Virus record (IMG/VR): IMGVR_UViG_3300050120_000230
Span: 248,001 to 312,000 of that record
Reading direction: 5' to 3' (one strand)
Length of the DNA: 64,000 nt
In this document: positions 3 to 60,422 of the stretch, piece after piece
Layout: every line of letters begins with the position of its first letter
Position numbering within the stretch: position 1 is the first letter of the stretch
The notes under the pieces: generated by a model
The model's input: the letters and a program-made list of their open reading frames with translations, nothing else
Told to the model about the DNA's origin: nothing
Databases searched by the model: none
Program-made: the position numbers and the translations under genes

Positions 3-236
3 CTTGCGTTCAAGCTGGTGTTCGGTTTCCGGCAGGCGCTCGATGGCGCCGTGCGGCGATTGTCGCCCAAAGAGATCGCCGATCACGCCTACGATCTCGC
101 GCAATCCTTCTCGAAGTATTATGCGAACACGCAGATCGGAGAATCACCGTCGAGGGTGGCCCTCTCTGCCAAGGTGTTGGCCCAACTGGAATGCTGCTTG
201 GGTCTGATGGGTATCGATATCCCCGAGCGGATGTGA
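3..236 (+). CDS. argS: Arginyl-tRNA synthetase, C-terminal DALR anticodon-binding domain (5' truncated by window)
   Basis: Frame open from nt 3; AYDLAQSFSKYY...RVAL...CLGLMGIDIPERM matches the ArgRS C-terminal pattern ending LLGI.xPERM. Confidence 0.85.
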   Translation, partial: LAFKLVFGFRQALDGAVRRLSPKEIADHAYDLAQSFSKYYANTQIGESPSRVALSAKVLAQLECCLGLMGIDIPERM

Positions 237-496
237 TGCGCTGGTTCTGGGAAATGCTCTATCGCCGCCAAGCGGTAGAGGTTGTCCTTGATCGAGATTG
301 CATCAGAGTTCTCGGCGGTGATGGTCCCACGACCTTGGCCAGACTACGAGATGTCGAGCGCGAATGGTGTCGTCACAACGTTCGCAGGCCATTCGGTCTA
401 TATTGCCGATGGCGAGGCGTAGGGGGCGGATACCATGCGTATCTGTGGTTCATTGAGCCGAAAGATGCTGCACTCTTCAAAATGTTTCAAACGTGA
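236..496 (+). CDS. DAxxFK[LM]xW-family small protein
   Basis: Start overlaps the argS stop (TGATG); ends DAALFKMFQT. Confidence 0.7.
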   Translation: MRWFWEMLYRRQAVEVVLDRDCIRVLGGDGPTTLARLRDVEREWCRHNVRRPFGLYCRWRGVGGGYHAYLWFIEPKDAALFKMFQT

Positions 497-502
497 CGTG
501 TC

Positions 503-509
503 CTAAATA
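503..509 (+). promoter_or_regulatory. T4-like late promoter CTAAATA, 4 nt before ATG 514
   Basis: The same motif precedes many structural and CTS-bearing genes. Confidence 0.7.
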
Positions 510-513
510 GTGG

Positions 514-1650
514 ATGCGTGAGTTCATCAATCTCCTAGAGCAAGCCGACAACGTCACGCTCTATCGCGGCGACAGCGGCCCTGTGGAGAAGTTCGAACTG
601 GCCAAGACCGATTCAGGAGCTTTGCTCGGCATCGGCATCTATCTCACCGATAGCCCGGAAGTGGCTGGCGACTATACCGTCAAGGGTTCCCAAGACATCG
701 CCTATCCGTCAGGGCGCCGGGGCGAAGACAATTCGTTCAACGATCCGAAGCAATTGACCGCTGGGTATCTGCGGAAACTCATGAACGATGCTGGTTTCCA
801 ACAGCAAATGGACGACACGAAAAATCAGTGGCAGGACAAATATTACAGCCTGTCGCGAGATATCGATTGGACCGACCATGAACGTGCTCGTAAGGAGCGC
901 GACGAAATGCAAGCCAAGTTCCAAGCGGACTATCAGGTCGTCCGATCCAAGATGATCCGCGCCGCCGTGGCCAAGGCCAAGGCACAGTTCAAGGCGATTC
1001 GACCGAACCTACGGATGGTCAAGCTGACCACTGGGGAATACATCTTCACGAAAGTTGGCCGGGCGGCCAGCATCGCGAAGTTTATCGTGCCTACGGCCTA
1101 CCTCGAACGATGCCTTCATGCTGAGCGGCCTCTGCCTGATGATCTTCTTCCGATCATGAAAGCGGCTTTCGCTCGTGTGGCTCATGACAAAAACCCCGAT
1201 CAAAAATGGGACCTACGGGTTCGGAATCCCAAGGGGAACAACGGCGACGAAGACATTGGCCTTTCATTCGATGAGTTCATCGCAGGCTTTCGTAAAGCGG
1301 GCGCTCGCTACGCGTGGACGGACGAAGTTCGTGGCGGCAAGGGTGAGAACCCTTCGCTCGACATCCTCTGGAACGGCACGCACAGCGGCTATCACGTCTT
1401 CCAGAACAAAGAAGCACAAGAGACCCTCATGCATGAACTCATGGCCATGGGCTACGTCGGCTACGCCTACGACGGCGGCGTTCGTCTAGCTGGCACCGGT
1501 GCTCGTGGTGGCGGTGGCATTCGTCACAACGCCTACGTTCTTTGGGACGAAAATGCCGTTCATTCTTTCCGCGTCGAGGGCGGCGGGGTGACTGATGACG
1601 AAGTCGGTGACTTGGAAAAAGGTATCAAGGCAGCAAAAGTCCTGCGTTAA
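514..1650 (+). CDS. Putative virion-packaged ADP-ribosyltransferase-like protein (ART-PolyVal-like) with insertion
   Basis: N-terminus MREFINLLE; LYRGD...GIYLTDSPEVAGDY...GYAY...YVLWD motifs. Confidence 0.55.
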   Translation: MREFINLLEQADNVTLYRGDSGPVEKFELAKTDSGALLGIGIYLTDSPEVAGDYTVKGSQDIAYPSGRRGEDNSFNDPKQLTAGYLRKLMNDAGFQQQMDDTKNQWQDKYYSLSRDIDWTDHERARKERDEMQAKFQADYQVVRSKMIRAAVAKAKAQFKAIRPNLRMVKLTTGEYIFTKVGRAASIAKFIVPTAYLERCLHAERPLPDDLLPIMKAAFARVAHDKNPDQKWDLRVRNPKGNNGDEDIGLSFDEFIAGFRKAGARYAWTDEVRGGKGENPSLDILWNGTHSGYHVFQNKEAQETLMHELMAMGYVGYAYDGGVRLAGTGARGGGGIRHNAYVLWDENAVHSFRVEGGGVTDDEVGDLEKGIKAAKVLR

Positions 1651-1664
1651 ACACTAAATAGTTC

Positions 1665-2063
1665 ATGTTTTCGATGCGTGAACTGATGTTGATGGTCGAA
1701 ACCGAGCGTCCGAGAGAAGGGCCGCCGGTTCCCGACACGTTGTTCCATGGCACCGGTGAAGAAGCGTGGAATAGCATCCAAGAGAGCGACACCATGTATT
1801 CGTCGGATCACAGAGACGAAGACGCTATTTCCTTCACCACCGATTGGCACACTGCAAATCGCTTCGCACAAGCCGTAGCCAAGCGAGAGGGCGGCGCCGG
1901 AGTCATCATCGAGTTCAACGGTGACGATCTGGCTCGCAAGTTCAACGTCGAGCCATTTTCAGATAGTGGGCTGGTTCACGCCGAACAAGAATGGCTAGTC
2001 AAGGTTGGCAGCATCACACAGGTCACCCGCTATATCATTGGCGTGGAAAAGGTGTCCGCGTAG
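1665..2063 (+). CDS. Putative ADP-ribosyltransferase-fold protein with capsid-targeting-like N-terminus
   Basis: CTAAATA at 1654; LFHGT...SFTTD...A..FA...EQEWLV. Confidence 0.55.
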   Translation: MFSMRELMLMVETERPREGPPVPDTLFHGTGEEAWNSIQESDTMYSSDHRDEDAISFTTDWHTANRFAQAVAKREGGAGVIIEFNGDDLARKFNVEPFSDSGLVHAEQEWLVKVGSITQVTRYIIGVEKVSA

Positions 2064-3192: not shown

Positions 3193-3752
3193 CCCAAGAG
3201 AGTGCGAATCGCCTGTTTGCCATTGGGTAGCAGCTTGCGGCTACCAATTCCTGCCCAGACGCCGTGCGGCTTAGGCACATCGGTGACCGCAAGCCACCCG
3301 TCTTCACCGGCCCACATAAACCAAGCTCCCGTGATCTGATCGAAGACGTAGGCTTCACATGCCTCTCCATCAAATCGGTCGATGAACATCTGAACGGCCC
3401 AAGATGTGCCACCGGTTACGATGCCGTCCTCGAAGCTTGCCACGGCGTAGACGCGCTCCGCGTCTTTGACCTGATACCAGTTTCGCCGCAGCAAATTCTT
3501 GACGAACAGACTCTTGGGCGGGAACCAGCGTTTAATGCCCTTGCTAGCGGCCTTGCAGGGGCCGTCAGCGGCCTCAAGCTGTTCTGGGGTCAACACCACT
3601 AGCTCAGCCTCCGGGGCCGCTGAGCGGTGTCCTGAGAAGCTAAAATGGACAACCATGTGACCGATCATGCCAGCGCACATGCCCCATTGTAGATCAGCGC
3701 CTTCGGCGCCGCCACTCAGGCAGATGTCATCTAGGTTCGAAGTCGTAGTCAT
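3165..3752 (-). CDS. SLOG/YspA-like nucleotide-binding protein
   Basis: CLSGGAEGADLQW glycine-rich motif; GGTSWAVQM; GIGSR. Confidence 0.55.
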   Translation of the reverse strand: MTTTSNLDDICLSGGAEGADLQWGMCAGMIGHMVVHFSFSGHRSAAPEAELVVLTPEQLEAADGPCKAASKGIKRWFPPKSLFVKNLLRRNWYQVKDAERVYAVASFEDGIVTGGTSWAVQMFIDRFDGEACEAYVFDQITGAWFMWAGEDGWLAVTDVPKPHGVWAGIGSRKLLPNGKQAIRTLLGYVSNASLI

Positions 3753-4035
3753 AGGTCACGGTTACCAGCCCTCTAGCACAATTATCCGAGATAATCCAGT
3801 CGTAATAGACCATCTTGAATAGTGTTGCGTCAGCAAGACTCTTAAAAGAAAGGAAGACGAGGGTCGTTTGTTTCGTCCAACCGTCATTGTCCGGTTTGCC
3901 ATAGCCAGTTTTGGCTTTGGCTTTTATTCTGAAGTTGCAATTGGTGTTGAGCCACAGGATCATTTCATCGATCCATTCAGCAAACTTGGTGTCCTCGCTC
4001 GGCCCATCTAGATAGAACTTTGACCATTGGGTCAT
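3727..4035 (-). CDS. DAxxFK[LM]xW-family protein
   Basis: DATLFKMVYY. Confidence 0.7.
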   Translation of the reverse strand: MTQWSKFYLDGPSEDTKFAEWIDEMILWLNTNCNFRIKAKAKTGYGKPDNDGWTKQTTLVFLSFKSLADATLFKMVYYDWIISDNCARGLVTVTYDYDFEPR

Positions 4036-4547
4036 AGGAGAGCACGGCGCGTATTTTCTAGCATTTGCTCCGTCACCATTTGCTTCAGGATTTGACGTTT
4101 CGCTCTACGCTTTTGTTTGCTGCCTCGCGGCGCCTTTCGATATCGCACACGAAGCGCAAAAATCGCGGCCGTAGGTCCGGTCATCGGTTGCACGCCACAA
4201 ATGTCATAAGCGATGACATTCGGCATAGCACGGCGAACGAGCGAGATAAGAACGCGATTGAGTTTCTGTTCGTCGGTGATGATCTCCCCAGAGAAGAACA
4301 GCTTGAACAGAGTGGCGTCACGATTCGAGCGGAACTTCACCTGAATGAACGACGGCCATTTGAACTGTTCCCACGTCTGGCCGCCGCCAGAACTGCCGAT
4401 CTTCGCGACCTTGGCCGTCTTCGTTTTGTTGGCGCGCAACCATTCTTCAATGCGGTCGTGCATTTCGCGAAATTGATCGACGATTGCGTTCGCCGATGAA
4501 TTGGGACGCAGATCGGGCCGGAGGCAGAAAGTGGACCACTTGGACAT
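4032..4547 (-). CDS. DAxxFKL-family domain fused to a major-capsid (gp23) Gol-like segment
   Basis: DATLFKLFF followed by VLISLVRRAMPNVIAYDICGVQPMTGPTAAIFALRVRY. Confidence 0.75.
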   Translation of the reverse strand: MSKWSTFCLRPDLRPNSSANAIVDQFREMHDRIEEWLRANKTKTAKVAKIGSSGGGQTWEQFKWPSFIQVKFRSNRDATLFKLFFSGEIITDEQKLNRVLISLVRRAMPNVIAYDICGVQPMTGPTAAIFALRVRYRKAPRGSKQKRRAKRQILKQMVTEQMLENTRRALL

Positions 4548-4552
4548 TTGGT

Positions 4553-5113
4553 TTACGATGTCACGAAATTGAACGGAGCGCAAACGCCTCCGCTGAACTC
4601 GGCCGCTGCCTCAAGTGCCGCTTCAAGTCGCCATTTCGGCTTCAGGTTGGCATGAGTTCCGGTCGTGTAGAGCGAACCAAGCGCGTAGCTTTCTCCGCAG
4701 CCCACAGCAGCATACTCCATGAGATTTTCGCCGACTTGAAAATCTGCATCGATCTGGAAGAGGCGGCCCTGAGTCCCAACGAGGAAACAACCGCCGGTTT
4801 CTTCGTTGGAATCGATACGGCTGAAACCATGTTCTTTGAATGATTTTCGCAAGGCCGTAATGAACTCCCGCACCATGAACTCCATCAGCGGGTCATCGGT
4901 CTTGGCTTTATCGAAATCTTCGAACTTCGGTGGCTTGAAGTCATATTGAAGAATCTGACCCATCCGAAACGACGAGGTGAAGCCCATCGCGAAGTCCCCA
5001 TTGGTGAAAACCTTCTTGTCTTTGCGGATGACGATGTCGAGGCCAGACACACCGGCGCTGTCGCCTGCTAGATGCGTCTTACCCTTGTGGGCGATCCCAA
5101 CAATGCAAGTCAT
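4553..5113 (-). CDS. HslV/proteasome-type Ntn (Thr) protease
   Basis: Starts MTCIVG (N-terminal Thr nucleophile); AGDS; AVGCGESYALG. Confidence 0.75.
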   Translation of the reverse strand: MTCIVGIAHKGKTHLAGDSAGVSGLDIVIRKDKKVFTNGDFAMGFTSSFRMGQILQYDFKPPKFEDFDKAKTDDPLMEFMVREFITALRKSFKEHGFSRIDSNEETGGCFLVGTQGRLFQIDADFQVGENLMEYAAVGCGESYALGSLYTTGTHANLKPKWRLEAALEAAAEFSGGVCAPFNFVTS

Positions 5114-5797: not shown

Positions 5798-6346
5798 TTA
5801 AGTATTCCTCACTTTAACCAAGCCCTTTGGGAATGTCATTATTCCGAGCGCATAGGGGATGTTCTTTTCGCTGTAGCCATTCCAAACCCGAGGAATCTCG
5901 AAGTTCATCGTGATCCACATGCGGTAACGCTCTGCATCTTCTTCATTTCGGAAAGCAGCGTTGTTGATTTGCGAATCTGACCCGATGCCGTGAGCGTTGT
6001 AGACATCAAGTTCGATGCCCCGCCCCTCATAGTTTCCGCAAAATATGGAGATATCTGGACTGATTTCGTAGAGCGGATTGATGGATTTGAACCCGGCGCC
6101 GCTGTTTCGCATGATAAAGCCACCCACTTCATGGGGCGTCAGGTGCGTCATTCGGGCAAAGTCACGAAACCCTTCTGCTCTACCAAAAGTACCGGGTCTG
6201 CGGATGTTGACTTCTTGGCCCACGAACCAGACGGTTTGTCCAAGCATGGTCTTCATCTCCATCAGCGTAGAGATGCGACCGTGGGCTTGGTCGAGACAAT
6301 ATTCAGGCGGGTGGATCATGGAATATTTTGTATAGCACCATGTCAC
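5798..6346 (-). CDS. Hypothetical protein
   Basis: Part of a packed minus-strand gene run. Confidence 0.55.
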   Translation of the reverse strand: MTWCYTKYSMIHPPEYCLDQAHGRISTLMEMKTMLGQTVWFVGQEVNIRRPGTFGRAEGFRDFARMTHLTPHEVGGFIMRNSGAGFKSINPLYEISPDISIFCGNYEGRGIELDVYNAHGIGSDSQINNAAFRNEEDAERYRMWITMNFEIPRVWNGYSEKNIPYALGIMTFPKGLVKVRNT

Positions 6347-6644
6347 GCTCGCTGGCGAATTGTAGACCGTAGCGATAGCAATTCCGCCCGCCGCCTACCC
6401 AAAACACGCGCACAACTTTGAAGCCGTCTGCCAAGTTGTCACAACACCAGCCGAGATGCTCGGGTGCGATATGAAAGGAATGGGGGTAGGTCATGCCTTT
6501 GCTTTTCTCGCCGGATGTGCGGCGATATCGCTTGGCAAGCCAGAGCACCATCGGTGGACAGTCGCGATCCGAGGCAACCGGCACGTCGTCGAACAATACG
6601 TTCGCGTTGAAGATGTCCCGCACCATCCCCAGATTTTTAGTCAT
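6303..6644 (-). CDS. DAxxFK[LM]xW-family protein
   Basis: WCCDNL...F.SERDMVLYKIFH. Confidence 0.65.
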   Translation of the reverse strand: MTKNLGMVRDIFNANVLFDDVPVASDRDCPPMVLWLAKRYRRTSGEKSKGMTYPHSFHIAPEHLGWCCDNLADGFKVVRVFWVGGGRNCYRYGLQFASERDMVLYKIFHDPPA

Positions 6645-12128: not shown

Positions 12129-12452
12129 TCAATCTACAGCGGCGAGCCTCTCCGCAAAATGCATTTTGAAAATCACCGCATCGGTTTCTCTCGGGAAAGA
12201 AATGGCTACGTAGGAATGCGCGTTTCCCCACTCTTTCTTTGCATGAGTAGTCACCAATGTGAAATCATGCTCCATGTTATAGGTCCGCAAGAATTCACGG
12301 AGGCCCGACCACTCTTCATCCATCATTCGACTCAGCGAAACCACTTCGTAGACCGTCATAGGTCTAGTAAAGATGGTCCCTTGTTTTGTGGAATTCAGCT
12401 CATCGATGGTTAATGTGGCAGAAAACAACCTGAACTCAGTCTTCAACTTCAA
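12129..12452 (-). CDS. DAxxFK[LM]xW-family protein
   Basis: DAVIFKMHF. Confidence 0.65.
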   Translation of the reverse strand: MKLKTEFRLFSATLTIDELNSTKQGTIFTRPMTVYEVVSLSRMMDEEWSGLREFLRTYNMEHDFTLVTTHAKKEWGNAHSYVAISFPRETDAVIFKMHFAERLAAVD

Positions 12453-17027: not shown

Positions 17028-17324
17028 TTACGCCCAAAACAGCTTGAAGAGCAGCGCGTCATCCTCGGACTCAAAATAGAAGATGAACGTGAAACGGTCT
17101 TCGGGCGTCCCTAAACGCTCGGACGTGTCATAGAACACCACATGCTTGAGTTTTTTGTTGCACCACTTCACGAAACCCGTTTGGAAAATCTTCAGTTCCC
17201 AGAGTGATCCTTTCCGATCAGGATGACGTAGGCGAACTGTGGGGACCATGACATAGTGTAGGCCGCGCACTTCATCCTCGCTCGGATGCTGGTATCTAAG
17301 CGGCGATTTCCGGCGAGTTCTCAT
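17028..17324 (-). CDS. DAxxFK[LM]xW-family protein
   Basis: DALLFKLFWA. Confidence 0.7.
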   Translation of the reverse strand: MRTRRKSPLRYQHPSEDEVRGLHYVMVPTVRLRHPDRKGSLWELKIFQTGFVKWCNKKLKHVVFYDTSERLGTPEDRFTFIFYFESEDDALLFKLFWA

Positions 17325-19427: not shown

Positions 19428-20036
19428 GTGCGTATTTTTCAACTCTTCGAGGCGGCGAGTTTGCCCATGGACCCGGAATCTCGGTTCCGCCGGGCCGAAG
19501 AGCTTGGTTTCACCGTCAAAGCGTTCCATGGCACCGGAGCAGACTTCCATTCGTTCTCGCTGGCCAAAGGTAAGCCTGCGCGCGGTGGTGGCTACGCCCC
19601 GATGTTCTCGAACGTCCCCGGCGAGGCTGGCGGCTACGCCAACAAGATCAAGGGTCATGTTCTTCCCGTTCTGCTGAGAATGCAGCGGCCGATGGAAATC
19701 AGTCACCTCAAGAAACCCGGCATGGACAAGCTGCTCGCCGGTGTCCCTTCACGATGGGATGACGGCGCCAAGAGTACCCGAGACGTGATGGATTCGGTGT
19801 GGAAATACTGGTTCGACAAACTGGGTGACCAAAAGAAAGCATGGACCGAAGTGTATCGCCACTTCGCCGCGCTGGGATACGACAGTTTCGTGTTCGCCGA
19901 CATCGAGCGCGACTATCCCGATGGCGCCACGGATTCGTTGCACACGAAGTTCGTCATCTTCGATCCAAAAAATGTTCGTTCGATTTTTGCGGCATTCGAT
20001 CCCAGCAAGGCGAACTCCGCGAACCTGCTGGCTTAG
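19428..20036 (+). CDS. ART-PolyVal-like ADP-ribosyltransferase domain protein with capsid-targeting-like N-terminus
   Basis: MRIFQLFEA; AFHGT..F..F...MFS...A.GYA...VLPVLL...GYDS...IFDPKNVRSIFAAFDP. Confidence 0.65.
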   Translation: MRIFQLFEAASLPMDPESRFRRAEELGFTVKAFHGTGADFHSFSLAKGKPARGGGYAPMFSNVPGEAGGYANKIKGHVLPVLLRMQRPMEISHLKKPGMDKLLAGVPSRWDDGAKSTRDVMDSVWKYWFDKLGDQKKAWTEVYRHFAALGYDSFVFADIERDYPDGATDSLHTKFVIFDPKNVRSIFAAFDPSKANSANLLA

Positions 20037-20578
20037 CCGTGCATCATCTTGAAGACGGCCGCTGCCTGCATATCGTCGAACGAGAAAATCAAAGTCCCGT
20101 CTCGACCTTGCCACCTACGACGATTCGTCCGCAATTTCATCGACCATACTTTGGCGTTTGATTGGGTCTCGACCCACTCCGCGATTTCATCCAAATCGGC
20201 CGCCTTCGCTTCGGCAACTTCCACCTCAAACTCTTGCGGCTCCATACTGAACCTAACCGTGAATTTTTCGGGCACCGCTATCCAACAGTCCGCAGCATCG
20301 GGTTCGTCGGCCGCCGTGACCAATCGGAACATGTAGACAGGTTCTTCGTCGCGTTTTTTCGCATAGCCTTTGCCAACGACGTTCAGGAACACCGGGATGG
20401 AAGACATGCGCTCGTATTCGGCTTCCTCGGCCTTTCGCTCGGCGACCGCATTTTTGTAAGCCGGGGTCTCCTGTAGCTCTGCCATGGCGGATTGCATGGG
20501 AGTGAGTTTATATCGGTCTGTGCGGCTTTTGTTGCATAGGTCGGCTCGCATCTGAGCGGCCTCTTCTTCCTCGGTCAT
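20033..20578 (-). CDS. DAxxFK[LM]xW-family protein
   Basis: W.E...W...FSFDDMQAAAVFKMMHG. Confidence 0.65.
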   Translation of the reverse strand: MTEEEEAAQMRADLCNKSRTDRYKLTPMQSAMAELQETPAYKNAVAERKAEEAEYERMSSIPVFLNVVGKGYAKKRDEEPVYMFRLVTAADEPDAADCWIAVPEKFTVRFSMEPQEFEVEVAEAKAADLDEIAEWVETQSNAKVWSMKLRTNRRRWQGRDGTLIFSFDDMQAAAVFKMMHG

Positions 20579-25229: not shown

Positions 25230-25531
25230 CGCATCTTGAAGTGAATCGCTGACATCTCATCCATGAACCAGATCGCGTTGACCGGATCGTCTTGGTTGAT
25301 GATTCTCGGCATCGGAATATGTTCCATGCAATCGTATCGAAATCCGGCCGGAATGTAGTGGAAGCCCACTGCACCTTTCACGTTGTCGTCCATCCATGCG
25401 AGCACGTCATCACGAAGGCGTTGGACGGTCTTTCCGCCCTCGTGGGTTCTCACGACCAGATCGTTTGGTATCAGGCAGCGGATAGCAGTTTCTATTTCAT
25501 CTACGCTCGGCCAGCGATTCTCAACCATCAT
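25217..25531 (-). CDS. DAxxFK[LM]xW-family protein (array member 7)
   Basis: SAIHFKMRWWS. Confidence 0.75.
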   Translation of the reverse strand: MMVENRWPSVDEIETAIRCLIPNDLVVRTHEGGKTVQRLRDDVLAWMDDNVKGAVGFHYIPAGFRYDCMEHIPMPRIINQDDPVNAIWFMDEMSAIHFKMRWWS

Positions 25532-25742
25532 GCTTATCTCCCCAACGTAGCTTGAAATGGAGATAGTCTTCGTCGCATTTGAAGGTGATGATGCAGACGG
25601 TGTTGAAGAAATCCATACCCCAGTGCCACTCGTCGCGCATGTTCAGTTTCAGCCACGCGAGAACCTCTGGCGAAGGCCGCCAAGTGTCGTATTTGGTGAA
25701 TACCGAATGTTCTTGGGAAATGGTGATACAACCGCCAGACAT
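25521..25742 (-). CDS. DAxxFK[LM]xW-family protein (array member 6)
   Basis: DYLHFKLRWG; start overlaps upstream TGA. Confidence 0.7.
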   Translation of the reverse strand: MSGGCITISQEHSVFTKYDTWRPSPEVLAWLKLNMRDEWHWGMDFFNTVCIITFKCDEDYLHFKLRWGDKHDG

Positions 25743-41726: not shown

Positions 41727-42002
41727 TCAGAGCGTAAGGAACATTTTCGCGAAGACAGCATCGGCCGGGACCTTGCATCCCACGATGTATTCGTAGTTCA
41801 CCGAATGCATGGTGCAGAATGTCCAATCGTTCGTCATGAATGGCGCGACTGCATCTGGAAAATCAGAAGGTTTGATTTTCGAAGAGATCGTGACCGTGCA
41901 TGGGAAACCATTGTCGATCATGTATTGGAGACGTTCATCCCAATCGGCGTGTTTCTGGTAATACTCACCAGCCCATTCGCTTAGAGGAATGCACCTACTC
42001 AA
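41727..42002 (-). CDS. DAxxFK[LM]xW-family protein
   Basis: DAVFAKMFL. Confidence 0.65.
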   Translation of the reverse strand: MSRCIPLSEWAGEYYQKHADWDERLQYMIDNGFPCTVTISSKIKPSDFPDAVAPFMTNDWTFCTMHSVNYEYIVGCKVPADAVFAKMFLTL

Positions 42003-42262: not shown

Positions 42263-42576
42263 AGCCAGAACGTCTTGAAGAGCACGGCGTCGCGCTCGTT
42301 GAATAGTTGAAAATGGATATACGTCTTGGGACGGGGCTCATAGTGACAGACGTTCACCAGTCCTTCTCTATTTTCCATGAGCCAGTCATAGGCATCTTGT
42401 GCTCGCCCACTGAACATGTTCGGCCCGAAGTCATAGGACGCGCGCTTCGGTGTGGCAGCCGTTCGAAGCTTCAGGCCAAACGTCGCCACGGTCACGTTGC
42501 AGAGTTCAATGATCTCTGGCGCGGGCTCATTAGCACCATCGCCCCATCCGAAAGGAAACACCGGCCTCACATCCAC
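42259..42576 (-). CDS. DAxxFK[LM]xW-family protein
   Basis: DAVLFKTFWL. Confidence 0.75.
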   Translation of the reverse strand: MDVRPVFPFGWGDGANEPAPEIIELCNVTVATFGLKLRTAATPKRASYDFGPNMFSGRAQDAYDWLMENREGLVNVCHYEPRPKTYIHFQLFNERDAVLFKTFWL

Positions 42577-42830
42577 ATCAACTTGAACTGCAAGGCATCG
42601 CGATAATTGGGAATGCCCAGATAGAAAACATCTGCATTTGAATTCGGGTAAAACAGGTCCGCAAAATTTGCCTTTGCCCAGTTGAATGCGGCTTCCGCCT
42701 TTGGCTCCCAGTTATAGACTGCCACCGGCGCGTCGCAACATTGAATGGCTTCTCGTTGCAACGCAAATACCCAGCCCGCCGCAACTTCGACCGGCCCAGA
42801 GATTTCCAAAATCGGGTCAGAGATTTCCAT
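42567..42830 (-). CDS. DAxxFK[LM]xW-family protein
   Basis: DALQFKLMWM. Confidence 0.75.
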   Translation of the reverse strand: MEISDPILEISGPVEVAAGWVFALQREAIQCCDAPVAVYNWEPKAEAAFNWAKANFADLFYPNSNADVFYLGIPNYRDALQFKLMWM

Positions 42831-45103: not shown

Positions 45104-45827
45104 GTCGTTCTCGTATCGGGGTTGGCGTGGGGCTGGCTTCAAGTTCAAGTTCACCAAAGGCGTAAACGTCTTGGTGGGGATGAACGGCTGCGGCAAAACC
45201 AACTCTGCCGAACTGTTGGCGATTCTTGTGGGTCACAAAGACGCGCACAAACTGTTGCGCGAAGACGACCAACTCAAATACGCCAAGATCGTCGTCGGCG
45301 AAGACGTGGGACCGTCTGCTACGCAGCGATACGTTTTGGAACTGAAGGACGGCATCGACCTTGAGAAAATCAACGCCTTCAAGGACTGTTTACCAACACT
45401 GACCAGTTTCGTGCTTCAGCAAGACGATCTGCGGGATGATCGGTTCGTGACGGCTAGGCGCGAGCCGGTTGAATGCCAAAAAGACATGCTGGAATGGCTC
45501 CGCGCGCACGATCTCGATCTGCGGCTCTACGTCAAGGATGGTGAGTACGCGACATTGCTGGTTAGCGAGACCGGCGCGCAACGCTATCTGATGACCGTGG
45601 GGATGCGGCGGGCGCCGAGCGCAACGCCGATGATCGTCGAGCATCCCGAGCGCAGCCTCCACATCATGCTGCGGAGGCGGATTGCCGATTACTATCGCGA
45701 GAGCAACGATCAGCAAGTCATCTTGACGACGCATGACCCGGAAGTGCTTAGCATGGTAGACAGTGCTCGATGGGGCACATACCACGATTGTGCCATCGAC
45801 ATGTCGGACAAGAAAATCAGATGGTAA
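45093..45827 (+). CDS. Compact ABC/AAA_15-21-type ATPase (OLD/AbiEii-like ATPase fold)
   Basis: GVNVLVGMNGCGKTN; IVEHPERSLH; QVILTTHDP. Confidence 0.75.
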   Translation: MYIESFSYRGWRGAGFKFKFTKGVNVLVGMNGCGKTNSAELLAILVGHKDAHKLLREDDQLKYAKIVVGEDVGPSATQRYVLELKDGIDLEKINAFKDCLPTLTSFVLQQDDLRDDRFVTARREPVECQKDMLEWLRAHDLDLRLYVKDGEYATLLVSETGAQRYLMTVGMRRAPSATPMIVEHPERSLHIMLRRRIADYYRESNDQQVILTTHDPEVLSMVDSARWGTYHDCAIDMSDKKIRW

Positions 45828-46285
45828 CGGTCAAGGACTTGTCTAATCTTCTCGATACGCTGGTCGTCGATGACACGCGCTCGATCATTCTCGTTCCAAA
45901 GCAAACGCCGAATCACCTAGACTCAGCGCACTCCATCCCACCGGAATATTTGTGGATGATTCCGTTGTCGGCGGCTGGACACTACATCATCCACGACCAC
46001 GCCAAAGAACCAGAGGGCATACAAGCATTTGAGCATTGTAGGTCACCGATCATTCAATACGATTTGTATGATGACCGTAGCTTCAGCTACCAGCGCACTC
46101 GTCTCCACGACATGGGCATGACACAGTGGTGCGAAGAAACCCTTCGCGGCCACTACATCGTGCGTAAGAACTATGAGGCGGTTTTGCCGCCGCCGAGCGT
46201 CAAAACGATCATCGAAGTCTGGTTCGATGACCCAGTGGACGCCGTGGTTTTCAAGATGCGATGGAAGGGCAACCCATGCGAATAG
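45821..46285 (+). CDS. DAxxFK[LM]xW-family protein
   Basis: WCEE...DAVVFKMRWK. Confidence 0.7.
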   Translation: MVTVKDLSNLLDTLVVDDTRSIILVPKQTPNHLDSAHSIPPEYLWMIPLSAAGHYIIHDHAKEPEGIQAFEHCRSPIIQYDLYDDRSFSYQRTRLHDMGMTQWCEETLRGHYIVRKNYEAVLPPPSVKTIIEVWFDDPVDAVVFKMRWKGNPCE

Positions 46286-46578
46286 AGGATCGCCCGAACA
46301 TCGCTCTTTCGCATCTTGACCTTCAAGATGGCAGGCACGAGGACATCAGCGATCTGCCTATCGTCGTCGTGCCGTTGAAAAACGTCTGTATTTCTGGTGG
46401 CAGCCTTGCATTGGCGCCCGAGACTAGGCATTGGCTAATTGCCAACGTCGGCCACCAATATCGTGGCGAGCAGATTTCGTGCTGGGATTATATCCTCGCA
46501 GAGAGCGCCACCGGGCTCGCGACGTTTCGGTTCAAAGACGTAACGCACGCCACCTTGTTCAAAATGTTCTTCTCATGA
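46276..46578 (+). CDS. DAxxFK[LM]xW-family protein
   Basis: HATLFKMFFS. Confidence 0.7.
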   Translation: MRIEDRPNIALSHLDLQDGRHEDISDLPIVVVPLKNVCISGGSLALAPETRHWLIANVGHQYRGEQISCWDYILAESATGLATFRFKDVTHATLFKMFFS

Positions 46579-49623: not shown

Positions 49624-49911
49624 CTACATCCATTTCAGCTTGAACAACGTCGCGTCATTCAATGACTCGAAGTGCAGAAGGAAAGCGAACTCAAGGCCGC
49701 CTTCCTCTTCCCGCGAGACTTGCAGCGAGAGATAGACATCTTCGAGCATCGTCTCCCGAAGCCACGTCTTGATGTCAGGATTGAAAGCGGTGATCTCGGA
49801 ATCGCTCAGGCCGCCATCCACACAAAACGGCGAATCGCACGGCAACTCGACGCGGATCAGATCATTCACGATCTGCGGTGGGTGCGGATGTTTGATGAAC
49901 AGTTCGGCCAT
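49624..49911 (-). CDS. DAxxFK[LM]xW-family protein
   Basis: DATLFKLKWM. Confidence 0.75.
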   Translation of the reverse strand: MAELFIKHPHPPQIVNDLIRVELPCDSPFCVDGGLSDSEITAFNPDIKTWLRETMLEDVYLSLQVSREEEGGLEFAFLLHFESLNDATLFKLKWM

Positions 49912-50931: not shown

Positions 50932-51237
50932 ATGCACAAGAAGGTGGAAACTCGGATGATCCGCGTGAAACTGCTCGCCGCTTTGAAGGAGCAGCGAGAT
51001 TGGAAAATCGAGAACTCAAATCGAATTCACCGATCCGATGGTCTGTGGGTTGAGAGAATTAGTGGAGAGCATTCCACCACGTTCTCCATCGGGTCTGCCG
51101 ATATCGGCGTGCCGCAAGCTTATATCGAGGCCGATTCGGAATTGATCGCCGCCTATACCCATGTGGTTGACTTGGGCATCGGCACGGACCCGGCACGTCG
51201 TCCGATCCTTGGGTTGCTAGGAATCGAAATCCCTTGA
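50932..51237 (+). CDS. Hypothetical protein
   Basis: Early promoter TTGACG-N16-TAGGTT near 50898. Confidence 0.55.
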   Translation: MHKKVETRMIRVKLLAALKEQRDWKIENSNRIHRSDGLWVERISGEHSTTFSIGSADIGVPQAYIEADSELIAAYTHVVDLGIGTDPARRPILGLLGIEIP

Positions 51238-51662
51238 CCTCCTATCAACTGCTCAAAGAGTATAAGGGCCTAGAGCCCTTCGCTGTATTCCACCCGATCA
51301 TGTGGACGAAGACTGACGACGATCTGTGCATAGGGGATCATGAACGCCGTATTCGTGAACTGTTGATGTGGCTCAATGACCGAAACGCACCATATCAAAT
51401 CATCATCAAAGAAGAACTGAAACCCGTAGAAAATTTCGACGGATACAACGGCTATCAATCCTACCGGCATTATCACAACAATTACGAACTCGTCGTCGAA
51501 GACGATGACGCCGTAGTATTGATGAAACTTTTCTTCGAAGATTTCGTGCCATTCCCGATTACACCCGAACCTGTTGTGGTTGTTGAAACTTCCACTCCTA
51601 TTACGGAGCCACCGCCAGAAAATTTCTTCGCCTTCTGGCTGAAGAGATTGGGATTTGGTTGA
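51234..51662 (+). CDS. DAxxFK[LM]xW-family protein (divergent)
   Basis: DDAVVLMKLFF. Confidence 0.6.
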   Translation: MTSYQLLKEYKGLEPFAVFHPIMWTKTDDDLCIGDHERRIRELLMWLNDRNAPYQIIIKEELKPVENFDGYNGYQSYRHYHNNYELVVEDDDAVVLMKLFFEDFVPFPITPEPVVVVETSTPITEPPPENFFAFWLKRLGFG

Positions 51663-56221: not shown

Positions 56222-56609
56222 ATATCATCCGCTCGACAAAGAGCGTCCCACCACAGATGTGACGAACGAAGAGTTGATGCAAATCCTCTCGGGCGAAATC
56301 TTGCCTCGGGATGTTCACTGGCAGCGTTGGCAAAAAGAACGTGTCAAGAGGATGAAGGCTGCGCGCCTCGATTTCACGGGTCATCTGAAAACGTTTCATA
56401 CTCGCGAACTGATGCAAATGCATCGCGACGGTAGCATTCAGGGGTGGGCCAATTTCGGCATTCTCGCCGAGGTGAGTTATAGCGAAAAAATCGAAACCAT
56501 GGTGCGAGCGGAACTCGCGACTCGTGAGCACATTCCGAACAAAACCGAAGCCAAGGCACTGCGGAGGGCCGCCGCCACGAAGCATCATGGCCCTAGGAAG
56601 CGCGCATGA
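56214..56609 (+). CDS. HHGP-family paralog 2
   Basis: VTNEELMQILSGEILP...HIPNK...ATKHHGP. Confidence 0.7.
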   Translation: MAEYHPLDKERPTTDVTNEELMQILSGEILPRDVHWQRWQKERVKRMKAARLDFTGHLKTFHTRELMQMHRDGSIQGWANFGILAEVSYSEKIETMVRAELATREHIPNKTEAKALRRAAATKHHGPRKRA

Positions 56610-56956
56610 CGGCTAGCGCAATGAACACGGCTGCAATTTTGAAGATGGCTGCGAAAATACATCTCAACAGTCACTATCCGAAAATGTCCCAACGCTTCGC
56701 GCCAATCTATGGCGCCGCCACGAATTATCTGGAAGACCGGCGGCCGGACATCACGGAATATTCGTCGGCGGGCTACCGTCTGTTCATCCTGAAAACGGAT
56801 GGAGAAACTCCTTCCCCTCGCGCGGCCGAAGCCGTGCAATGGCTCAGCGACAACAAGATCGTCCATGAGTATGAATTCCAGCTTACGCGGAACTCGATTT
56901 GGATTAGGTTCCCTCGTGGAGAAGACGCCGCCCTGTTCAAATTGTTTTGGATGTGA
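56606..56956 (+). CDS. DAxxFK[LM]xW-family protein
   Basis: DAALFKLFWM. Confidence 0.75.
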   Translation: MTASAMNTAAILKMAAKIHLNSHYPKMSQRFAPIYGAATNYLEDRRPDITEYSSAGYRLFILKTDGETPSPRAAEAVQWLSDNKIVHEYEFQLTRNSIWIRFPRGEDAALFKLFWM

Positions 56957-56959
56957 GCC

Positions 56960-58591: not shown

Positions 58592-58651
58592 TATTTGGTT
58601 GACCAATTCCAAATGCCGACTATCCTCTGACTAATGTAATCGGAGGCATCC

Positions 58652-58915
58652 ATGGACGACTCGAACTACATCGCCGAATATCCCAAGTGGACCACCGGGG
58701 CGTTCATGATCGGCATGGGCGTGCTTGGCGGCAGCTTCGTGGCGGTGATGACCGCGACCACCAGTGGCCTGCGGATCGTGGAAGCCGTTATATGCGGCAT
58801 CGATCTGATCGTCGCCGTGGCGCTGCCCACCATCGTTCGCTATCGTTTCCGCAAGAAGGCTCGCGCCCAGTTCGCGGCCAACGGCGGCGATCCCTCCAAG
58901 CTGCATTTCTTCTAG
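58652..58915 (+). CDS. Two-TM membrane protein
   Basis: Early promoter TTGACC-N16-TATCCT at 58599; SD GGAGG. Confidence 0.7.
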   Translation: MDDSNYIAEYPKWTTGAFMIGMGVLGGSFVAVMTATTSGLRIVEAVICGIDLIVAVALPTIVRYRFRKKARAQFAANGGDPSKLHFF

Positions 58916-58924
58916 GAGGGGTCC

Positions 58925-59266
58925 ATGAGCTACGCGATCAACTTCTTCGGCTGGAACAACACCGAGGGCCACGATAAGGTCTGGGGCTACGTGACCATTG
59001 GCGAAGGCTCGACGGCCGAGCTTTACAATTTCTGGGGCAAGCGCGGGAAGCGTCTGGCCTTCAAGAAGTTCCCCACCGGCTACGGGTCGGCGTTTGAACT
59101 CTCCAAGCTTTCGAAGAAGAAAGCCGAGAAGGGATATCAGGAGTATTCGGTCGCCGAGATCGACAAGGTATGCGAGGGTTTCATCGATCAGTTCGAGAAG
59201 GAACTGACGTTGGCCAAACTCTTCGACAACTTCCGGGGGCGACCGGTTGAAGGTGGATATTCGTGA
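58925..59266 (+). CDS. WGR-like domain protein
   Basis: HDKVWG...FWGKRGK...KK..KGY. Confidence 0.65.
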   Translation: MSYAINFFGWNNTEGHDKVWGYVTIGEGSTAELYNFWGKRGKRLAFKKFPTGYGSAFELSKLSKKKAEKGYQEYSVAEIDKVCEGFIDQFEKELTLAKLFDNFRGRPVEGGYS

Positions 59267-59436
59267 CGAGCAGGACTGTCGCGCTGAACGACAAGGAATA
59301 CACCATTCGTATCAATTCTGACGGCCGACCTGTGGGGATCGTGGTCGCAGTGAAACCAAGCGCCAAGATGGGCGCCCATACTCGTCGGGTAGACGTGCGC
59401 GGCACCCTTGGGCGCGAAGTGCTGAAACTGATCTAA
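59263..59436 (+). CDS. 57-aa hypothetical protein (absent from ORF track)
   Basis: GTGA and TAATG overlaps with both neighbours. Confidence 0.55.
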   Translation: MTSRTVALNDKEYTIRINSDGRPVGIVVAVKPSAKMGAHTRRVDVRGTLGREVLKLI

Positions 59437-59879
59437 TGGGCGCGCAAGAACTCTGGAAGCTGGCCAACAATTTCGACGACTTGGGCGTGGTGACATCGAA
59501 GCCGCGTATCGGCTCCATTGGCTCGCGTTGCGAGCACCATTACGTCACGCACATTCGCGACAGTGGCGATGCGGCGGCCTATGCCGACATGACCTTCCTG
59601 ACGGCGATGGATATCTTCCAGCGCATCCAGCGATTCGAAGTTCGCGACGAACGCAATCGTCTCGCGCTCGAACTGCTCAAAGCATCATCGAAATGCGAGT
59701 GCAACGTTCTGCGTCTTTGGACGCCGAGGGGCAACCCGAACGACTCCAAGGGCACCTACGTTTTTCCGAAGACCGAACACGACGCGGCGGTGTTCGCGAT
59801 CTTCTTCAATGAGACCGACCCGGCGATCTGGCGGCACGAACGTATCGGTGAACCGAGGATGTTCTTTTTCAACCAATGA
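59436..59879 (+). CDS. Hypothetical protein
   Basis: DAAVFAIFF, a degenerate family motif. Confidence 0.6.
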   Translation: MGAQELWKLANNFDDLGVVTSKPRIGSIGSRCEHHYVTHIRDSGDAAAYADMTFLTAMDIFQRIQRFEVRDERNRLALELLKASSKCECNVLRLWTPRGNPNDSKGTYVFPKTEHDAAVFAIFFNETDPAIWRHERIGEPRMFFFNQ

Positions 59880-60157
59880 CTTTCGTGCTAAGTAGGCCGA
59901 TGGATATTCGTTGTTCCCCTCGTGACTCGACCAACCAACAGGAAGACGCCTTTCTGATTGAGGGACCGTGGGCAGAAATTGCCTACGTCCTGAAATGGAT
60001 CGCGGCGAACTGTTCGACGGTATGGGAAAGCAATTTCATTCCGAATGGGAATTACGGGCCGGGAAATGTCTCCTACAACGTCAAGTTCAAGGATGAACGT
60101 GACGCTATTTTCTTCAAGATGATGTGGCATGGGCATAGTTTCTCGGAAGTTGCGTGA
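59876..60157 (+). CDS. DAxxFK[LM]xW-family protein
   Basis: DAIFFKMMWH. Confidence 0.75.
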   Translation: MTFVLSRPMDIRCSPRDSTNQQEDAFLIEGPWAEIAYVLKWIAANCSTVWESNFIPNGNYGPGNVSYNVKFKDERDAIFFKMMWHGHSFSEVA

Positions 60158-60422
60158 CGCATTCCTGAAGCCGGAATGGCAGTTCGTGGAAGGCAATAAG
60201 ATGCCTAGCGCGTGGGAGGATGAACCTCCGGCGTGCGGTGGCCTATGCTACCTCGAAGATGAAGTTGCCCAATGGTGCAGGGAGAACTACACCAAGCCTC
60301 CCACAATCTGGTTCCTCGATCTGACCGACTATGACAAGTGGGTTCAGAATTGGTTGATCGATTTTCGCTCCGAGGCCGACGCCCTGCTCTTCAAAATGCG
60401 ATGGAGTGATTATCGGCGGTAA
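60129..60422 (+). CDS. DAxxFK[LM]xW-family protein
   Basis: WCREN...DALLFKMRWS; start uncertain (60129 or 60201). Confidence 0.7.
   Translation: MGIVSRKLRDAFLKPEWQFVEGNKMPSAWEDEPPACGGLCYLEDEVAQWCRENYTKPPTIWFLDLTDYDKWVQNWLIDFRSEADALLFKMRWSDYRR

What the first reader, a model, noticed from the sequence alone, without database searches (positions are those of the whole stretch)
236..60422. About 28-member paralog family ending in DAxxFK[LM]xW, scattered singly and in tandem arrays
Seen: small ORFs at 236, 3727, 4032, 6303, 12129, 17028, 20033, eight in tandem at 24822-27054, 28487, four at 41727-42830, 45821, 46276, 49624, 51234, 56606, 59876, 60129 and 60879. They share W[CL]xE...W...[FY]xF...DAxxFK[LM]xW and have hypervariable N-termini. 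Inference: a constant small scaffold or docking helix plus a variable interaction surface, like a modular effector or anti-defence library. The terminal helix could be a common docking or sorting tag.
Basis: partly seen in the sequence, partly recalled or inferred. Interest (0 to 1): 0.62.

Follow-up and report, generated by a model that had tools for sequence, protein, structure and literature searches.

The report
Expanded small-protein family in giant phage
A very large soil phage devotes about one gene in eight (74 genes, 25 in this window) to an undescribed family of small proteins that share a 55-residue C-terminal fold but each have a unique front end; this looks like a diversified toolkit for dealing with the host, but its function is untested.

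Summary
An iterated profile finds 25 significant members in the window. The whole 415-kb IMG/VR phage record holds 74 members, 12% of its genes.

The shared part is not a bare tag. It is a ~55-aa C-terminal domain that AlphaFold models confidently (pLDDT 82) as helix-hairpin-helix, with an extra N-terminal strand in a full-length model. It matches nothing in Pfam, PHROGs, NCBIfam or PDB sequences, and no solved fold specifically (best Z 4.9).

It is not a coupling artefact, because synonymous codons vary freely at the conserved residues.

The family is widespread in uncultured phages (1,811 cluster representatives). Sinorhizobium phage Phosso has at least 44 copies and PA5oct has 2, neither tagged as virion-associated.

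Paralogues share nothing outside the domain, yet orthologues conserve their N-termini as well as the domain. Members evolve faster than their neighbours (45% vs 67% identity) and are gained and lost within collinear arrays.

Every face of the C-terminal helix is conserved, and only that helix carries genome-specific residues. My best reading is a library of soluble accessory proteins, each with a constant docking module and a member-specific part. The partner and the function are unknown.

The parts
191..496 (+). family member (101 aa); lies directly upstream of ORF 514-1650, a weak ART-PolyVal match
   Evidence: HMM E 5.5e-14; ART-like neighbour
3727..4035 (-). family member (102 aa) with a 22-aa tail after the domain
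   Evidence: HMM E 3.3e-16
4032..4583 (-). family member (183 aa): domain in the N-terminal half, then a ~45-aa fragment of the T4-type major capsid protein Gp23
   Evidence: HMM E 1.9e-18; PF07068 E 9.9e-18, residues 107-154 on profile 3-45
6303..6644 (-). family member (113 aa)
   Evidence: HMM E 9e-14
12129..12452 (-). family member (107 aa)
   Evidence: HMM E 7.4e-14
17028..17324 (-). family member (98 aa)
   Evidence: HMM E 1.5e-19
20033..20578 (-). family member (181 aa), tail-to-tail with the ART-PolyVal gene; the pair is conserved in the related contig
   Evidence: HMM E 3.9e-9; orthologue at 41% identity
24822..25229 (-). tandem array member 8 of 8 (135 aa)
   Evidence: HMM E 2e-18; orthologue at 53% identity
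25217..25531 (-). tandem array member 7 of 8 (104 aa); no counterpart in the related contig's array
   Evidence: HMM E 9e-20
25521..25865 (-). tandem array member 6 of 8 (114 aa)
   Evidence: HMM E 7.6e-14; orthologue at 67% identity
25742..26131 (-). tandem array member 5 of 8 (longest ORF 129 aa; the true start is probably later)
   Evidence: HMM E 6.5e-17; orthologue at 34% identity
25993..26220 (-). tandem array member 4 of 8 (75 aa)
   Evidence: HMM E 3.7e-19; orthologue at 46% identity
26220..26477 (-). tandem array member 3 of 8 (85 aa)
   Evidence: HMM E 1.3e-16; orthologue at 61% identity
26468..26788 (-). tandem array member 2 of 8 (106 aa); no counterpart in the related contig's array
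   Evidence: HMM E 3.8e-10
26779..27054 (-). tandem array member 1 of 8 (91 aa)
   Evidence: HMM E 2.5e-19; orthologue at 36% identity
41999..42262 (-). array member (87 aa)
   Evidence: HMM E 8.1e-16; orthologue at 41% identity
42259..42576 (-). array member (105 aa)
   Evidence: HMM E 3e-13
42567..42830 (-). array member (87 aa)
   Evidence: HMM E 1.1e-14
45770..46285 (+). family member (171 aa), overlapping the end of an AAA_21/AAA_15 ATPase gene
   Evidence: HMM E 4.5e-21; neighbour Pfam match
46261..46578 (+). family member (105 aa); no orthologue in the related contig
   Evidence: HMM E 1.9e-13
49624..49911 (-). family member (95 aa), the one folded full-length; no orthologue in the related contig
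   Evidence: HMM E 7.6e-22; model pLDDT 78
56606..56956 (+). family member (116 aa)
   Evidence: HMM E 2.3e-14; orthologue at 45% identity
59876..60157 (+). family member (93 aa)
   Evidence: HMM E 1.7e-17; orthologue at 55% identity
60129..60422 (+). family member (97 aa); its domain is the first row of alignments A1 and A2 and was folded
   Evidence: HMM E 1.9e-22; orthologue at 73% identity; model pLDDT 82
60879..61649 (+). atypical member (256 aa): domain at the N-terminus, then a 176-aa unique extension; absent from the related contig
   Evidence: HMM E 4.1e-17
28487..28729 (+). possible degenerate member (only the last-helix motif is recognisable)
   Evidence: HMM E 0.003; sequence
41727..42002 (-). 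possible degenerate member next to the three-gene array
   Evidence: HMM E 0.55, not significant; motif remnant
51234..51662 (+). possible degenerate member with both helix motifs weakly recognisable and a 40-aa tail
   Evidence: HMM E 0.38, not significant; sequence
19428..20036 (+). ART-PolyVal ADP-ribosyltransferase gene next to a family member (context, not a member)
   Evidence: PF18760 E 8.7e-12; 85% identical orthologue, same arrangement

Best explanation
These ORFs are real genes of a previously undescribed small-protein family, seen so far almost only in phage and viral records. The family is defined by a ~55-residue C-terminal domain of helix, beta-hairpin, helix, and in at least one member an N-terminal strand joins the sheet. 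The genome is a T4-related giant phage whose nearest cultured relatives are Sinorhizobium phage Phosso and Agrobacterium phage Atu_ph07.

Shown here:
- The family has expanded to 74 copies, 12% of the genes.
- Copies sit singly and in translationally coupled arrays inside ordinary operons.
- Each copy pairs the constant domain with its own N-terminal segment and hairpin loop.
- These member-specific parts are unrelated between paralogues but conserved between orthologues.

Inferred mechanism: the proteins are soluble cytoplasmic accessory factors. The constant module, above all its fully conserved C-terminal helix, docks onto one common partner or onto other family members. The member-specific parts would recognise different targets. 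This would give the phage a diversified, fast-evolving set of host-interaction or counter-defence adaptors. The partner, the targets and the timing of expression are not known.
For: Real genes under protein-level selection:
- Synonymous codons vary at every conserved position, for example Asp GAC 32/GAT 16, Lys AAA 26/AAG 39 and four Ala codons.
- Orthologues have dN/dS around 0.1-0.5, with dS saturated.

Common fold:
- Domain model pLDDT 82.4, with H13-22, E28-36, E39-47, H51-61.
- Full-length model pLDDT 77.7, with an added strand at 19-24.

Scale:
- 25 copies in the window and 74 in the genome.
- Significant clustering: 23 adjacent pairs against 8.8 expected.
- 1,811 representatives in public data, on contigs up to 573 kb.
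- At least 44 copies in Phosso, 14-16 on a related 59-kb contig and 2 in PA5oct.

Constant plus specific architecture:
- Non-domain parts have no similarity to anything else in the genome.
- Between orthologues the N-terminal identity equals the domain identity: 0.48/0.50, 0.52/0.57, 0.77/0.71, 0.40/0.44.
- The domain is strictly terminal in 64 of 74 own copies and in nearly all of 135 external ones.

Arms-race-like dynamics:
- Family orthologues have median 45% identity against 67% for neighbours, p 4.5e-4.
- Arrays are collinear, with six shared and two private members each.
- No within-genome pair exceeds about 45% identity.

Docking helix:
- D47, A48, L50, F51, K52, L/M53, R/F54 and W55 are all conserved, whereas helix 1 is conserved on one face only.
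- The only columns with genome-specific residues are three in that helix, with p 4e-9, 1e-5 and 1e-5.

Soluble and non-catalytic: 1 of 74 has a hydrophobic 19-mer, 1 of 74 has CxxC, and there is no conserved polar triad.

Not virion-tagged in PA5oct.
Against: - No partner was identified.
- The only binding test, a homodimer of the domain, gave no verdict.
- Expression timing could not be assigned: 21 copies follow late-type motifs, 8 follow early-type motifs and 45 are undetermined.
- The genome-specific helix residues could instead reflect founder effects of separate expansions, since 61 of 74 copies have their best hit within their own genome, or gene conversion.
- Conservation all round a short helix can also arise from packing inside a small domain.
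- N-terminal lengths are upper bounds, because I took the first possible start codon. Typical external members are only about 86 aa, which leaves a short specific part.
- No anti-defence or host-takeover activity is shown for any member anywhere.
Confidence: 0.45

Rival explanations
1. Pure scaffold, no common partner. The domain is only a small stable fold, and its conserved residues are all structural. Each paralogue acts alone through its own hairpin loop and N-terminus, as a set of unrelated small binders or regulators.
For: - Nearly all conserved residues are aromatic or aliphatic, or are helix caps.
- Hairpin length varies from about 46 to 91 residues per domain.
- Charge is not consistent across members.
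- The dimer test gave nothing.
Against: - Conservation covers every face of the last helix, including an invariant Lys.
- Genome-specific residues are confined to that helix.
- The strict placement at the very C-terminus across hundreds of diverged proteins is not needed for a mere scaffold.
Confidence: 0.25
2. Clp-linked module. The C-terminal domain marks the proteins for, or adapts substrates to, the phage-encoded Clp protease. This would give timed turnover of many small factors or of their bound targets.
For: - The genome's ClpP (G000 406512-407051) is flanked by members at 405160 and 407163.
- In PA5oct one of only two members lies three genes from ClpP.
- Phosso's second Clp-like gene lies inside a family cluster.
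- Clp systems read C-terminal signals (established knowledge).
Against: - Atu_ph07 has ClpP but at most one marginal member.
- The Phosso counterparts of the ClpP-adjacent members are not next to ClpP.
- At 12% gene density, adjacency is expected often.
- Known Clp tags are unstructured, whereas this helix is part of a fold.
- The adjacency was noticed after the fact.
Confidence: 0.08
3. Nucleic-acid-binding regulators. The two-layer alpha/beta sandwich binds RNA or DNA like KH, RRM or ACT-type modules, and the copies regulate different transcripts or promoters.
For: The weak structural neighbours are KH, RRM, ACT and dsRBD domains, with Z 3.5-4.9.
Against: - Z values are far below the level expected even for chance neighbours (notes).
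- There is no GxxG or RNP-type motif in the profile.
- Median pI is 6.2, with 39 of 74 acidic, like other small genes.
Confidence: 0.08
4. Packaged internal proteins. The conserved C-terminus is a capsid-targeting signal, analogous to the T4 internal-protein tag, and the variable parts are injected effectors.
For: - The architecture of a constant element plus a variable body resembles the T4 internal-protein locus (established knowledge).
- One member is fused to a capsid-protein fragment.
- Members lie among structural genes.
Against: - The two PA5oct homologues lack the ESI-MS/MS virion tag that their neighbours carry. The paper lists 93 virion proteins.
- The T4 tag is a short, cleaved N-terminal peptide, whereas this is a folded C-terminal domain.
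- 74 packaged species would be unprecedented.
Confidence: 0.06
5. Artefact. The motif is a by-product of nucleotide signals for translational coupling at gene junctions, or the ORFs are non-coding.
For: Many stops overlap the next start, of the type xxATGA. Family ORFs have low codon-usage scores.
Against: - Codons vary synonymously at conserved residues.
- Similarity spans 55 residues with E down to 1e-22.
- Single, uncoupled members keep the motif.
- The fold is confident.
- Orthologues are conserved.
- There are 1,811 outside relatives.
Confidence: 0.01

Closest known systems
Zinc-ribbon expansion (~35 copies) in Bacillus phage G, described as an unprecedented lineage-specific expansion (PMC7824862); also arrays of more than 30 similar genes in some jumbo phages (PMC13282480)
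   Same: Both are a small domain amplified to tens of copies in one giant phage genome, with function only guessed.
   Different: - The fold is unrelated and has no metal ligands (1 of 74 has CxxC).
- The copy number is about twice as high (74).
- The copies are highly diverged, at most about 45% identical, not 'highly similar'.
- The family is shared across distant phages.
T4 internal proteins with a capsid-targeting sequence (established knowledge, recalled, not tested against sequences here)
   Same: Both have a constant short element joined to highly variable bodies in a plastic locus of T4-type phages, and both are linked to counter-defence.
   Different: - The T4 element is an N-terminal peptide of about 10 residues that is cleaved off. 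Here it is a folded 55-aa C-terminal domain.
- N-termini here share nothing.
- The PA5oct homologues are not virion-tagged.
Poxvirus ankyrin/PRANC (F-box-like) and similar substrate-adaptor families (recalled analogy only)
   Same: Both are an expanded viral family with a conserved C-terminal docking element and variable target-binding parts, with rapid turnover.
   Different: There is no sequence or fold relation, and the variable part here is short and not a repeat. A docking partner is not demonstrated. This is an analogy for the mechanism, not a claim of membership.
KH, ACT and RRM-type two-layer alpha/beta sandwiches
   Same: They show a similar order of strand, helix, hairpin and helix, and they are the top weak structural neighbours.
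   Different: The best Z is 4.9, which is within the noise for this search. Sequence identity is 6-18%, the defining loops and motifs are absent, and there is no consistent basic charge.
Hyperplastic regions of T4-type phages filled with small early ORFs flanked by promoter cassettes (recalled from the T4-phage literature)
   Same: Both have many small, fast-evolving ORFs of unknown function, gained and lost between relatives, with recurrent sigma-70-type promoter cassettes.
   Different: Here one homologous domain accounts for the ORFs. The members are spread through operons of both promoter types rather than confined to early regions.

Membership tests
Any curated protein family (Pfam-A, PHROGs v4, NCBIfam 20) | Significant match of the domain to a library profile | tested here: not met
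   Pfam was scanned with 10 window and 8 external members at E up to 1. PHROGs was scanned with 10 members. NCBIfam was scanned with 60 members. None matched the domain.
Any solved structure family | Sequence or fold similarity to a PDB chain clearly above background | tested here: not met
   - Profile against PDB sequences: best E 0.31.
- Foldseek: best E 0.9 and 1.1.
- Exhaustive aligner: best Z 3.6 and 4.9.
- Viral model library: best E 0.31.
KH domain | Conserved GxxG loop between two helices ahead of the hairpin | tested here: not met
   Only one helix precedes the hairpin, and no GxxG column exists in the 55-column profile.
T4-type internal proteins (capsid-targeting sequence) | Shared N-terminal targeting peptide with a prohead-protease site | tested here: not met
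   N-terminal parts of the 74 copies share no detectable similarity with each other.
T4-type internal proteins (capsid-targeting sequence) | Presence in the virion | tested here: inconclusive
   This rests only on the annotation of two distant homologues in PA5oct, which lack the ESI-MS/MS tag. There are no proteomics for this phage.
Gp23 major capsid protein (PF07068), for ORF 4032-4583 only | Match over most of the 376-position profile | tested here: not met
   Only profile positions 3-45 are present. Intact genes of about 410 aa exist in Phosso and Atu_ph07.
The new family itself (working definition) | C-terminal ~55-aa domain with W-[CL]-x-E-N in helix 1, F-x-F in strand 2 and D-A-x-x-F-K-[LM]-x-W in the last helix, ending within a few residues of the stop | tested here: met
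Met by 25 window ORFs, 74 genome ORFs and 135 of the top external representatives.
Self-associating (dimeric) module | Predicted or measured homodimer | tested here: inconclusive
   The complex prediction returned 'no answer'. Natural two-domain proteins exist: 1 of 74 own and 7 of 135 external.

The most novel reading that the evidence does not exclude
The family is a phage-encoded adaptor library. The conserved C-terminal module plugs every member into one phage or host machine. Candidates suggested by gene neighbourhood are the phage ClpP protease or the ART-PolyVal ADP-ribosyltransferases. The roughly 70 different N-terminal and hairpin parts would each deliver a different host protein, for example a defence component, for degradation or modification. 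That would be a bacterial-virus counterpart of the expanded substrate-receptor families of eukaryotic viruses.
Probability: 0.1. Interest if true: 0.9.

Novelty: new variant of a known kind. Interest (0 to 1): 0.58.

Why it matters
Giant phages carry hundreds of genes with no known function, and how their genomes grew is an open question. Here one undescribed domain explains 12% of the genes of a phage of more than 400 kb. It also explains dozens of the 'unique' ORFs in the cultured Sinorhizobium phage Phosso, and probably in its relative AP-J-162, so it removes a sizeable block of dark matter at once. The pattern of a constant module plus a conserved but member-specific part, faster divergence than neighbouring genes, and gain and loss inside collinear arrays is what host-virus conflict genes usually look like. 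Cultured phages carry the family (Phosso on S. meliloti, PA5oct on P. aeruginosa), so pull-downs, deletions and structures are feasible now. If a common partner exists, it would reveal a hub that these phages target or use.

Tried and rejected
- **Homodimer prediction** of the domain (two copies, alignment A2): 'no answer', score 0.00, with the partner's own fold uncertain in that engine. This is neither support nor evidence against.
I worked round it through the tail sheath protein and whole-record profile searches.
- **Temporal class from promoter motifs:** I found an extended sigma-70-type consensus and a T4-late-like [CA]TAAATA[C] motif, but 45 of 74 members could not be assigned. No timing claim is made.
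- **dN/dS:** synonymous sites are saturated between the two related phages, so the ratios are only rough.
- **Orthology with Phosso:** only one clear pair, at 73 bits. The age of the expansion is unresolved.
- **Captured gene pieces:** I tested whether variable parts are pieces of other genes. That holds only for the Gp23 fragment in ORF 4032-4583 and for one weak case in Phosso. There is no other similarity, so I rejected it as a general rule.
- **PA5oct supplements** for per-gene expression: none are held.
- **tblastn** of single members against 50,697 phage records: nothing useful.
- **P0001**, the top hit of the big profile search, is a low-complexity repeat protein and was discarded.

Full report
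**What the window is.** The 64-kb window is bases 248,001-312,000 of a 415,409-bp linear IMG/VR virus record. CheckV rates the record about 72% complete, and its GC content is 55%. The tail sheath gene (34369-35697) is 42% identical to that of Sinorhizobium phage Phosso (469 kb). It is 40% identical to Agrobacterium phage Atu_ph07 (490 kb) and about 31% to Salicola phage SCTP-2 and the PA5oct group. The genome is therefore a T4-related giant phage from soil.

**Checking the observation.** A six-frame pattern scan finds the D-A-x-x-F-K-[LM]-x-W type motif close to the stop codon of 17 ORFs. A profile built from these and iterated over all window ORFs converges at once on 25 members, with E from 4e-9 to 2e-22. 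These three carry recognisable remnants of the motif but are not statistically supported. The eight-gene tandem array at 24822-27054 is confirmed, and the array at 41727-42830 has three firm members.

Extending the profile to the whole record gives 74 ORFs, one of them with two domains. That is 12% of about 615 genes. Members form 23 adjacent pairs where 8.8 are expected, with a maximum of 20 in 5,000 shuffles. They occur as 37 singletons, 10 pairs, 3 triplets and one run of eight, and 84% of flanking genes are co-directional.

**Not a coupling artefact.** Many members end in TGG-xxA-TGA, with the next gene's ATG overlapping the stop. That explains why most proteins end exactly one residue after the Trp. 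The conserved residues nevertheless use synonymous codons freely: Asp GAC 32/GAT 16, four Ala codons, Lys AAA 26/AAG 39, and five or six codons each for Leu and Arg. Isolated members keep the motif. Selection therefore acts on the protein.

**What the conserved part is.** The shared region is about 55 residues. Profile conservation is W15 100%, C16 68%, N19 83%, F42 94%, D47 95%, A48 81%, F51 97%, K52 98%, L/M53 94%, R/F54 83% and W55 93%.
- AlphaFold2 on the 25-row alignment gives a confident model (pLDDT 82.4) of helix 13-22, strands 28-36 and 39-47, and helix 51-61.
- A full-length model of ORF 49624-49911 with a 60-row alignment (pLDDT 77.7) adds a moderately confident strand at residues 19-24 ahead of the same core.

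The terminal helix is therefore part of a folded domain, not a free tag.

The domain matches nothing in the libraries I could search:
- Pfam, PHROGs and NCBIfam gave no match.
- PDB sequences gave a best E of 0.31.
- Foldseek against PDB and against viral models gave no E below 0.3.
- An exhaustive structural aligner gave a best Z of 3.6 and 4.9. The hits were a mix of KH, ACT, RRM and EF-G-domain pieces, well inside that search's noise.
- The nearest ESM Atlas clusters are unnamed and 78-100% viral.

The proteins have no membrane segments (1 of 74 borderline), no metal motifs, no conserved polar catalytic set, and an ordinary pI distribution with a median of 6.2.

**Distribution.** A profile search of 1.84 billion cluster representatives finds 1,811 proteins at E up to 1e-3. 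The top hit is a low-complexity false positive. The 135 best external members have the same architecture. Their median length is about 86 aa, the domain sits at the very C-terminus, and seven have two domains. They lie in phage-like arrays of small ORFs on contigs up to 573 kb.

| Phage or contig | Family members found |
|---|---|
| Sinorhizobium phage Phosso | 33-34 by window-based profiles; at least 44 in the regions I fetched, all annotated hypothetical |
| PA5oct | 2 divergent members (EST35_0247, EST35_0275) |
| Atu_ph07 | 1 marginal hit |
| SCTP-2 | 0 |
| RsoM2USA | 0 |

The literature I could search does not describe the family. That includes a comparative overview of jumbo phages, a paper on the Sinorhizobium jumbo phage AP-J-162 that counts 304 'unique' ORFs, and two 2026 reviews. 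Large paralogue arrays as a phenomenon are known: about 35 zinc ribbons in phage G, and arrays of more than 30 similar genes.

**The variable parts.** No non-domain part of any of the 74 copies resembles any other ORF in the genome at E<1e-3. No two copies are more than about 45% identical overall. These parts are nevertheless not junk. A related 59-kb soil contig (tail sheath 80% identical) is syntenic with much of the window. In four orthologous pairs the N-terminal identity equals the domain identity: 0.48/0.50, 0.52/0.57, 0.77/0.71 and 0.40/0.44.

The eight-gene array is collinear between the two phages. Six orthologues lie in the same order at 34-67% identity, and each phage has two members the other lacks. 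Members 46261, 49624 and 60879 have no counterpart there. Across 12 pairs, family orthologues have a median identity of 45%, against 67% for 28 neighbouring genes (Mann-Whitney p 4.5e-4).

One caution applies. I used the first possible start codon, so N-terminal lengths are upper bounds, and their Arg/Pro-rich composition may partly reflect over-extension.

**Evidence bearing on mechanism.** Two observations point at the last helix as an interaction surface. First, it is conserved at almost every position and so on all faces, whereas helix 1 is conserved on one face only. This is an inference from helical periodicity. Second, I compared the 74 copies here with 44 in Phosso. Of 54 profile columns, only three differ strongly, and all three lie in that helix:

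| Column | This genome | Phosso | p |
|---|---|---|---|
| 48 | Met 3% | Met 48% | 4e-9 |
| 52 | Leu 45% | Leu 86% | 1e-5 |
| 53 | Thr 1% | Thr 36% | 1e-5 |

Parallel, genome-specific residues across dozens of long-diverged paralogues are what a shared, co-evolving partner would give. Founder effects of separate expansions, or gene conversion, could produce the same pattern, and 61 of 74 copies do have their best match within their own genome. A direct homodimer prediction gave no verdict. The two PA5oct homologues lie among nucleotide-metabolism genes and lack the virion mass-spectrometry tag their neighbours carry, which weakly argues against packaging.

Timing could not be settled. An extended sigma-70-type consensus (TTTT[CG]GTTGAC[CG]AAA, 57 sites) and a T4-late-like motif ([CA]TAAATA[C], 15-18-fold enriched upstream of genes and present before the tail sheath gene) both occur. 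Only 29 of 74 members could be assigned, 21 to late-type and 8 to early-type motifs.

**Neighbourhood leads, all noticed after the fact.**
- An ART-PolyVal ADP-ribosyltransferase gene (19428-20036) abuts member 20033-20578 tail-to-tail. The pair is conserved in the related contig, at 85% and 41% identity.
- A weak ART-like ORF (514-1650) directly follows member 191-496.
- In a distant 573-kb phage, the only member in 20 kb overlaps the stop of an ART-PolyVal gene.
- The genome's ClpP is flanked by members. One of PA5oct's two members is three genes from ClpP, and Phosso's second Clp-like gene sits in a family cluster.
- Against the ClpP link, Atu_ph07 has ClpP without the family, and the orthologous Phosso pair is not next to ClpP.

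At 12% gene density such adjacencies are common, so I treat them as leads only.

**Verdict.** The finding is real, and larger and better defined than reported. It is a new, essentially phage-restricted small-protein family with a confident but unclassifiable fold, expanded to 74 diverged copies in one giant phage. My best-supported reading (confidence about 0.45) is a library of soluble accessory proteins that combine a constant docking module with member-specific recognition parts, evolving under conflict-like dynamics. The main rival (about 0.25) is that the domain is only a scaffold, with no common partner. Clp-linked, nucleic-acid-binding and packaged-effector readings are each below 0.1, and the artefact reading is refuted. 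Function remains untested. Cultured phages carry the family, so the decisive experiments are ordinary ones.

Noticed in passing
window 4116-4265 (-), inside ORF 4032-4583; also G000 396617-397375 (+): A ~45-aa piece of the T4-type major capsid protein (Gp23 profile positions 3-45) is fused behind a family domain. The contig has no intact capsid gene, only this piece and a 252-aa partial covering profile positions 99-353. Phosso has an intact gene plus similar stray fragments, one inside the N-terminal part of a family ORF.
   Followed up: partly
window, e.g. 17022(-), 24815(-), 27738(+), 35997(-), 36387(+), 42874(+), 51659(+), 58599(+), 60428(+); 57 sites genome-wide: An extended, partly palindromic sigma-70-type promoter consensus, TTTT[CG]GTTGAC[CG]AAA, followed by a TAtxxT -10 box. 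It often lies immediately after the stop of a family gene or array.
   Followed up: partly
genome-wide upstream regions; e.g. just before the tail sheath gene at window 34369: The motif [CA]TAAATA[C] is enriched 15-18-fold upstream of genes and looks like this lineage's version of the T4 late promoter. The canonical TATAAATA is absent from the window.
   Followed up: partly
window 19428-20036 (+) and 514-1650 (+); G000 106735-107565: There are three ART-PolyVal ADP-ribosyltransferase-like genes in the genome. Two have a family member as immediate neighbour. The same adjacency occurs in a distant 573-kb phage contig (L042 9030-10297).
   Followed up: partly
G000 405160-407471 (outside the window); PA5oct 180349-182187; Phosso 113159-118291: Phage-encoded ClpP or Clp-like genes lie next to or inside clusters of family members in three phages. 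Atu_ph07 has ClpP without the family.
   Followed up: partly
window 39941-41422 (+) and 52199-54136 (+): Two large ORFs 11 kb apart match different parts of the same PHROG. Phrog_12710 positions 482-731 match the first ORF and positions 8-192 match the second. This could be a split or rearranged large protein. A family array and other genes lie between them.
   Followed up: no
window 45018-45827 (+): An AAA_21/AAA_15 (AbiEii-like/SMC-type) ATPase gene overlaps the start of family member 45770-46285. The pair is conserved in the related contig.
   Followed up: no
all family ORFs in the window: Family genes score low on a codon-usage model trained on the genome's long ORFs, for example 98 aa scoring 6 against 99 aa scoring 23 for a neighbour. 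Their N-terminal parts are enriched in Arg, Pro, His, Trp and Cys. Possible causes are over-extended start calls, fast evolution or recent origin of these segments.
   Followed up: no
window 5123-5776 (-), 11540-12094 (-), 49932-50471 (+): Operon neighbours of family genes include a dNMP kinase, a calcineurin-like phosphoesterase and a weak dual-specificity phosphatase match. Family genes are therefore interleaved with metabolic as well as structural genes.
   Followed up: no
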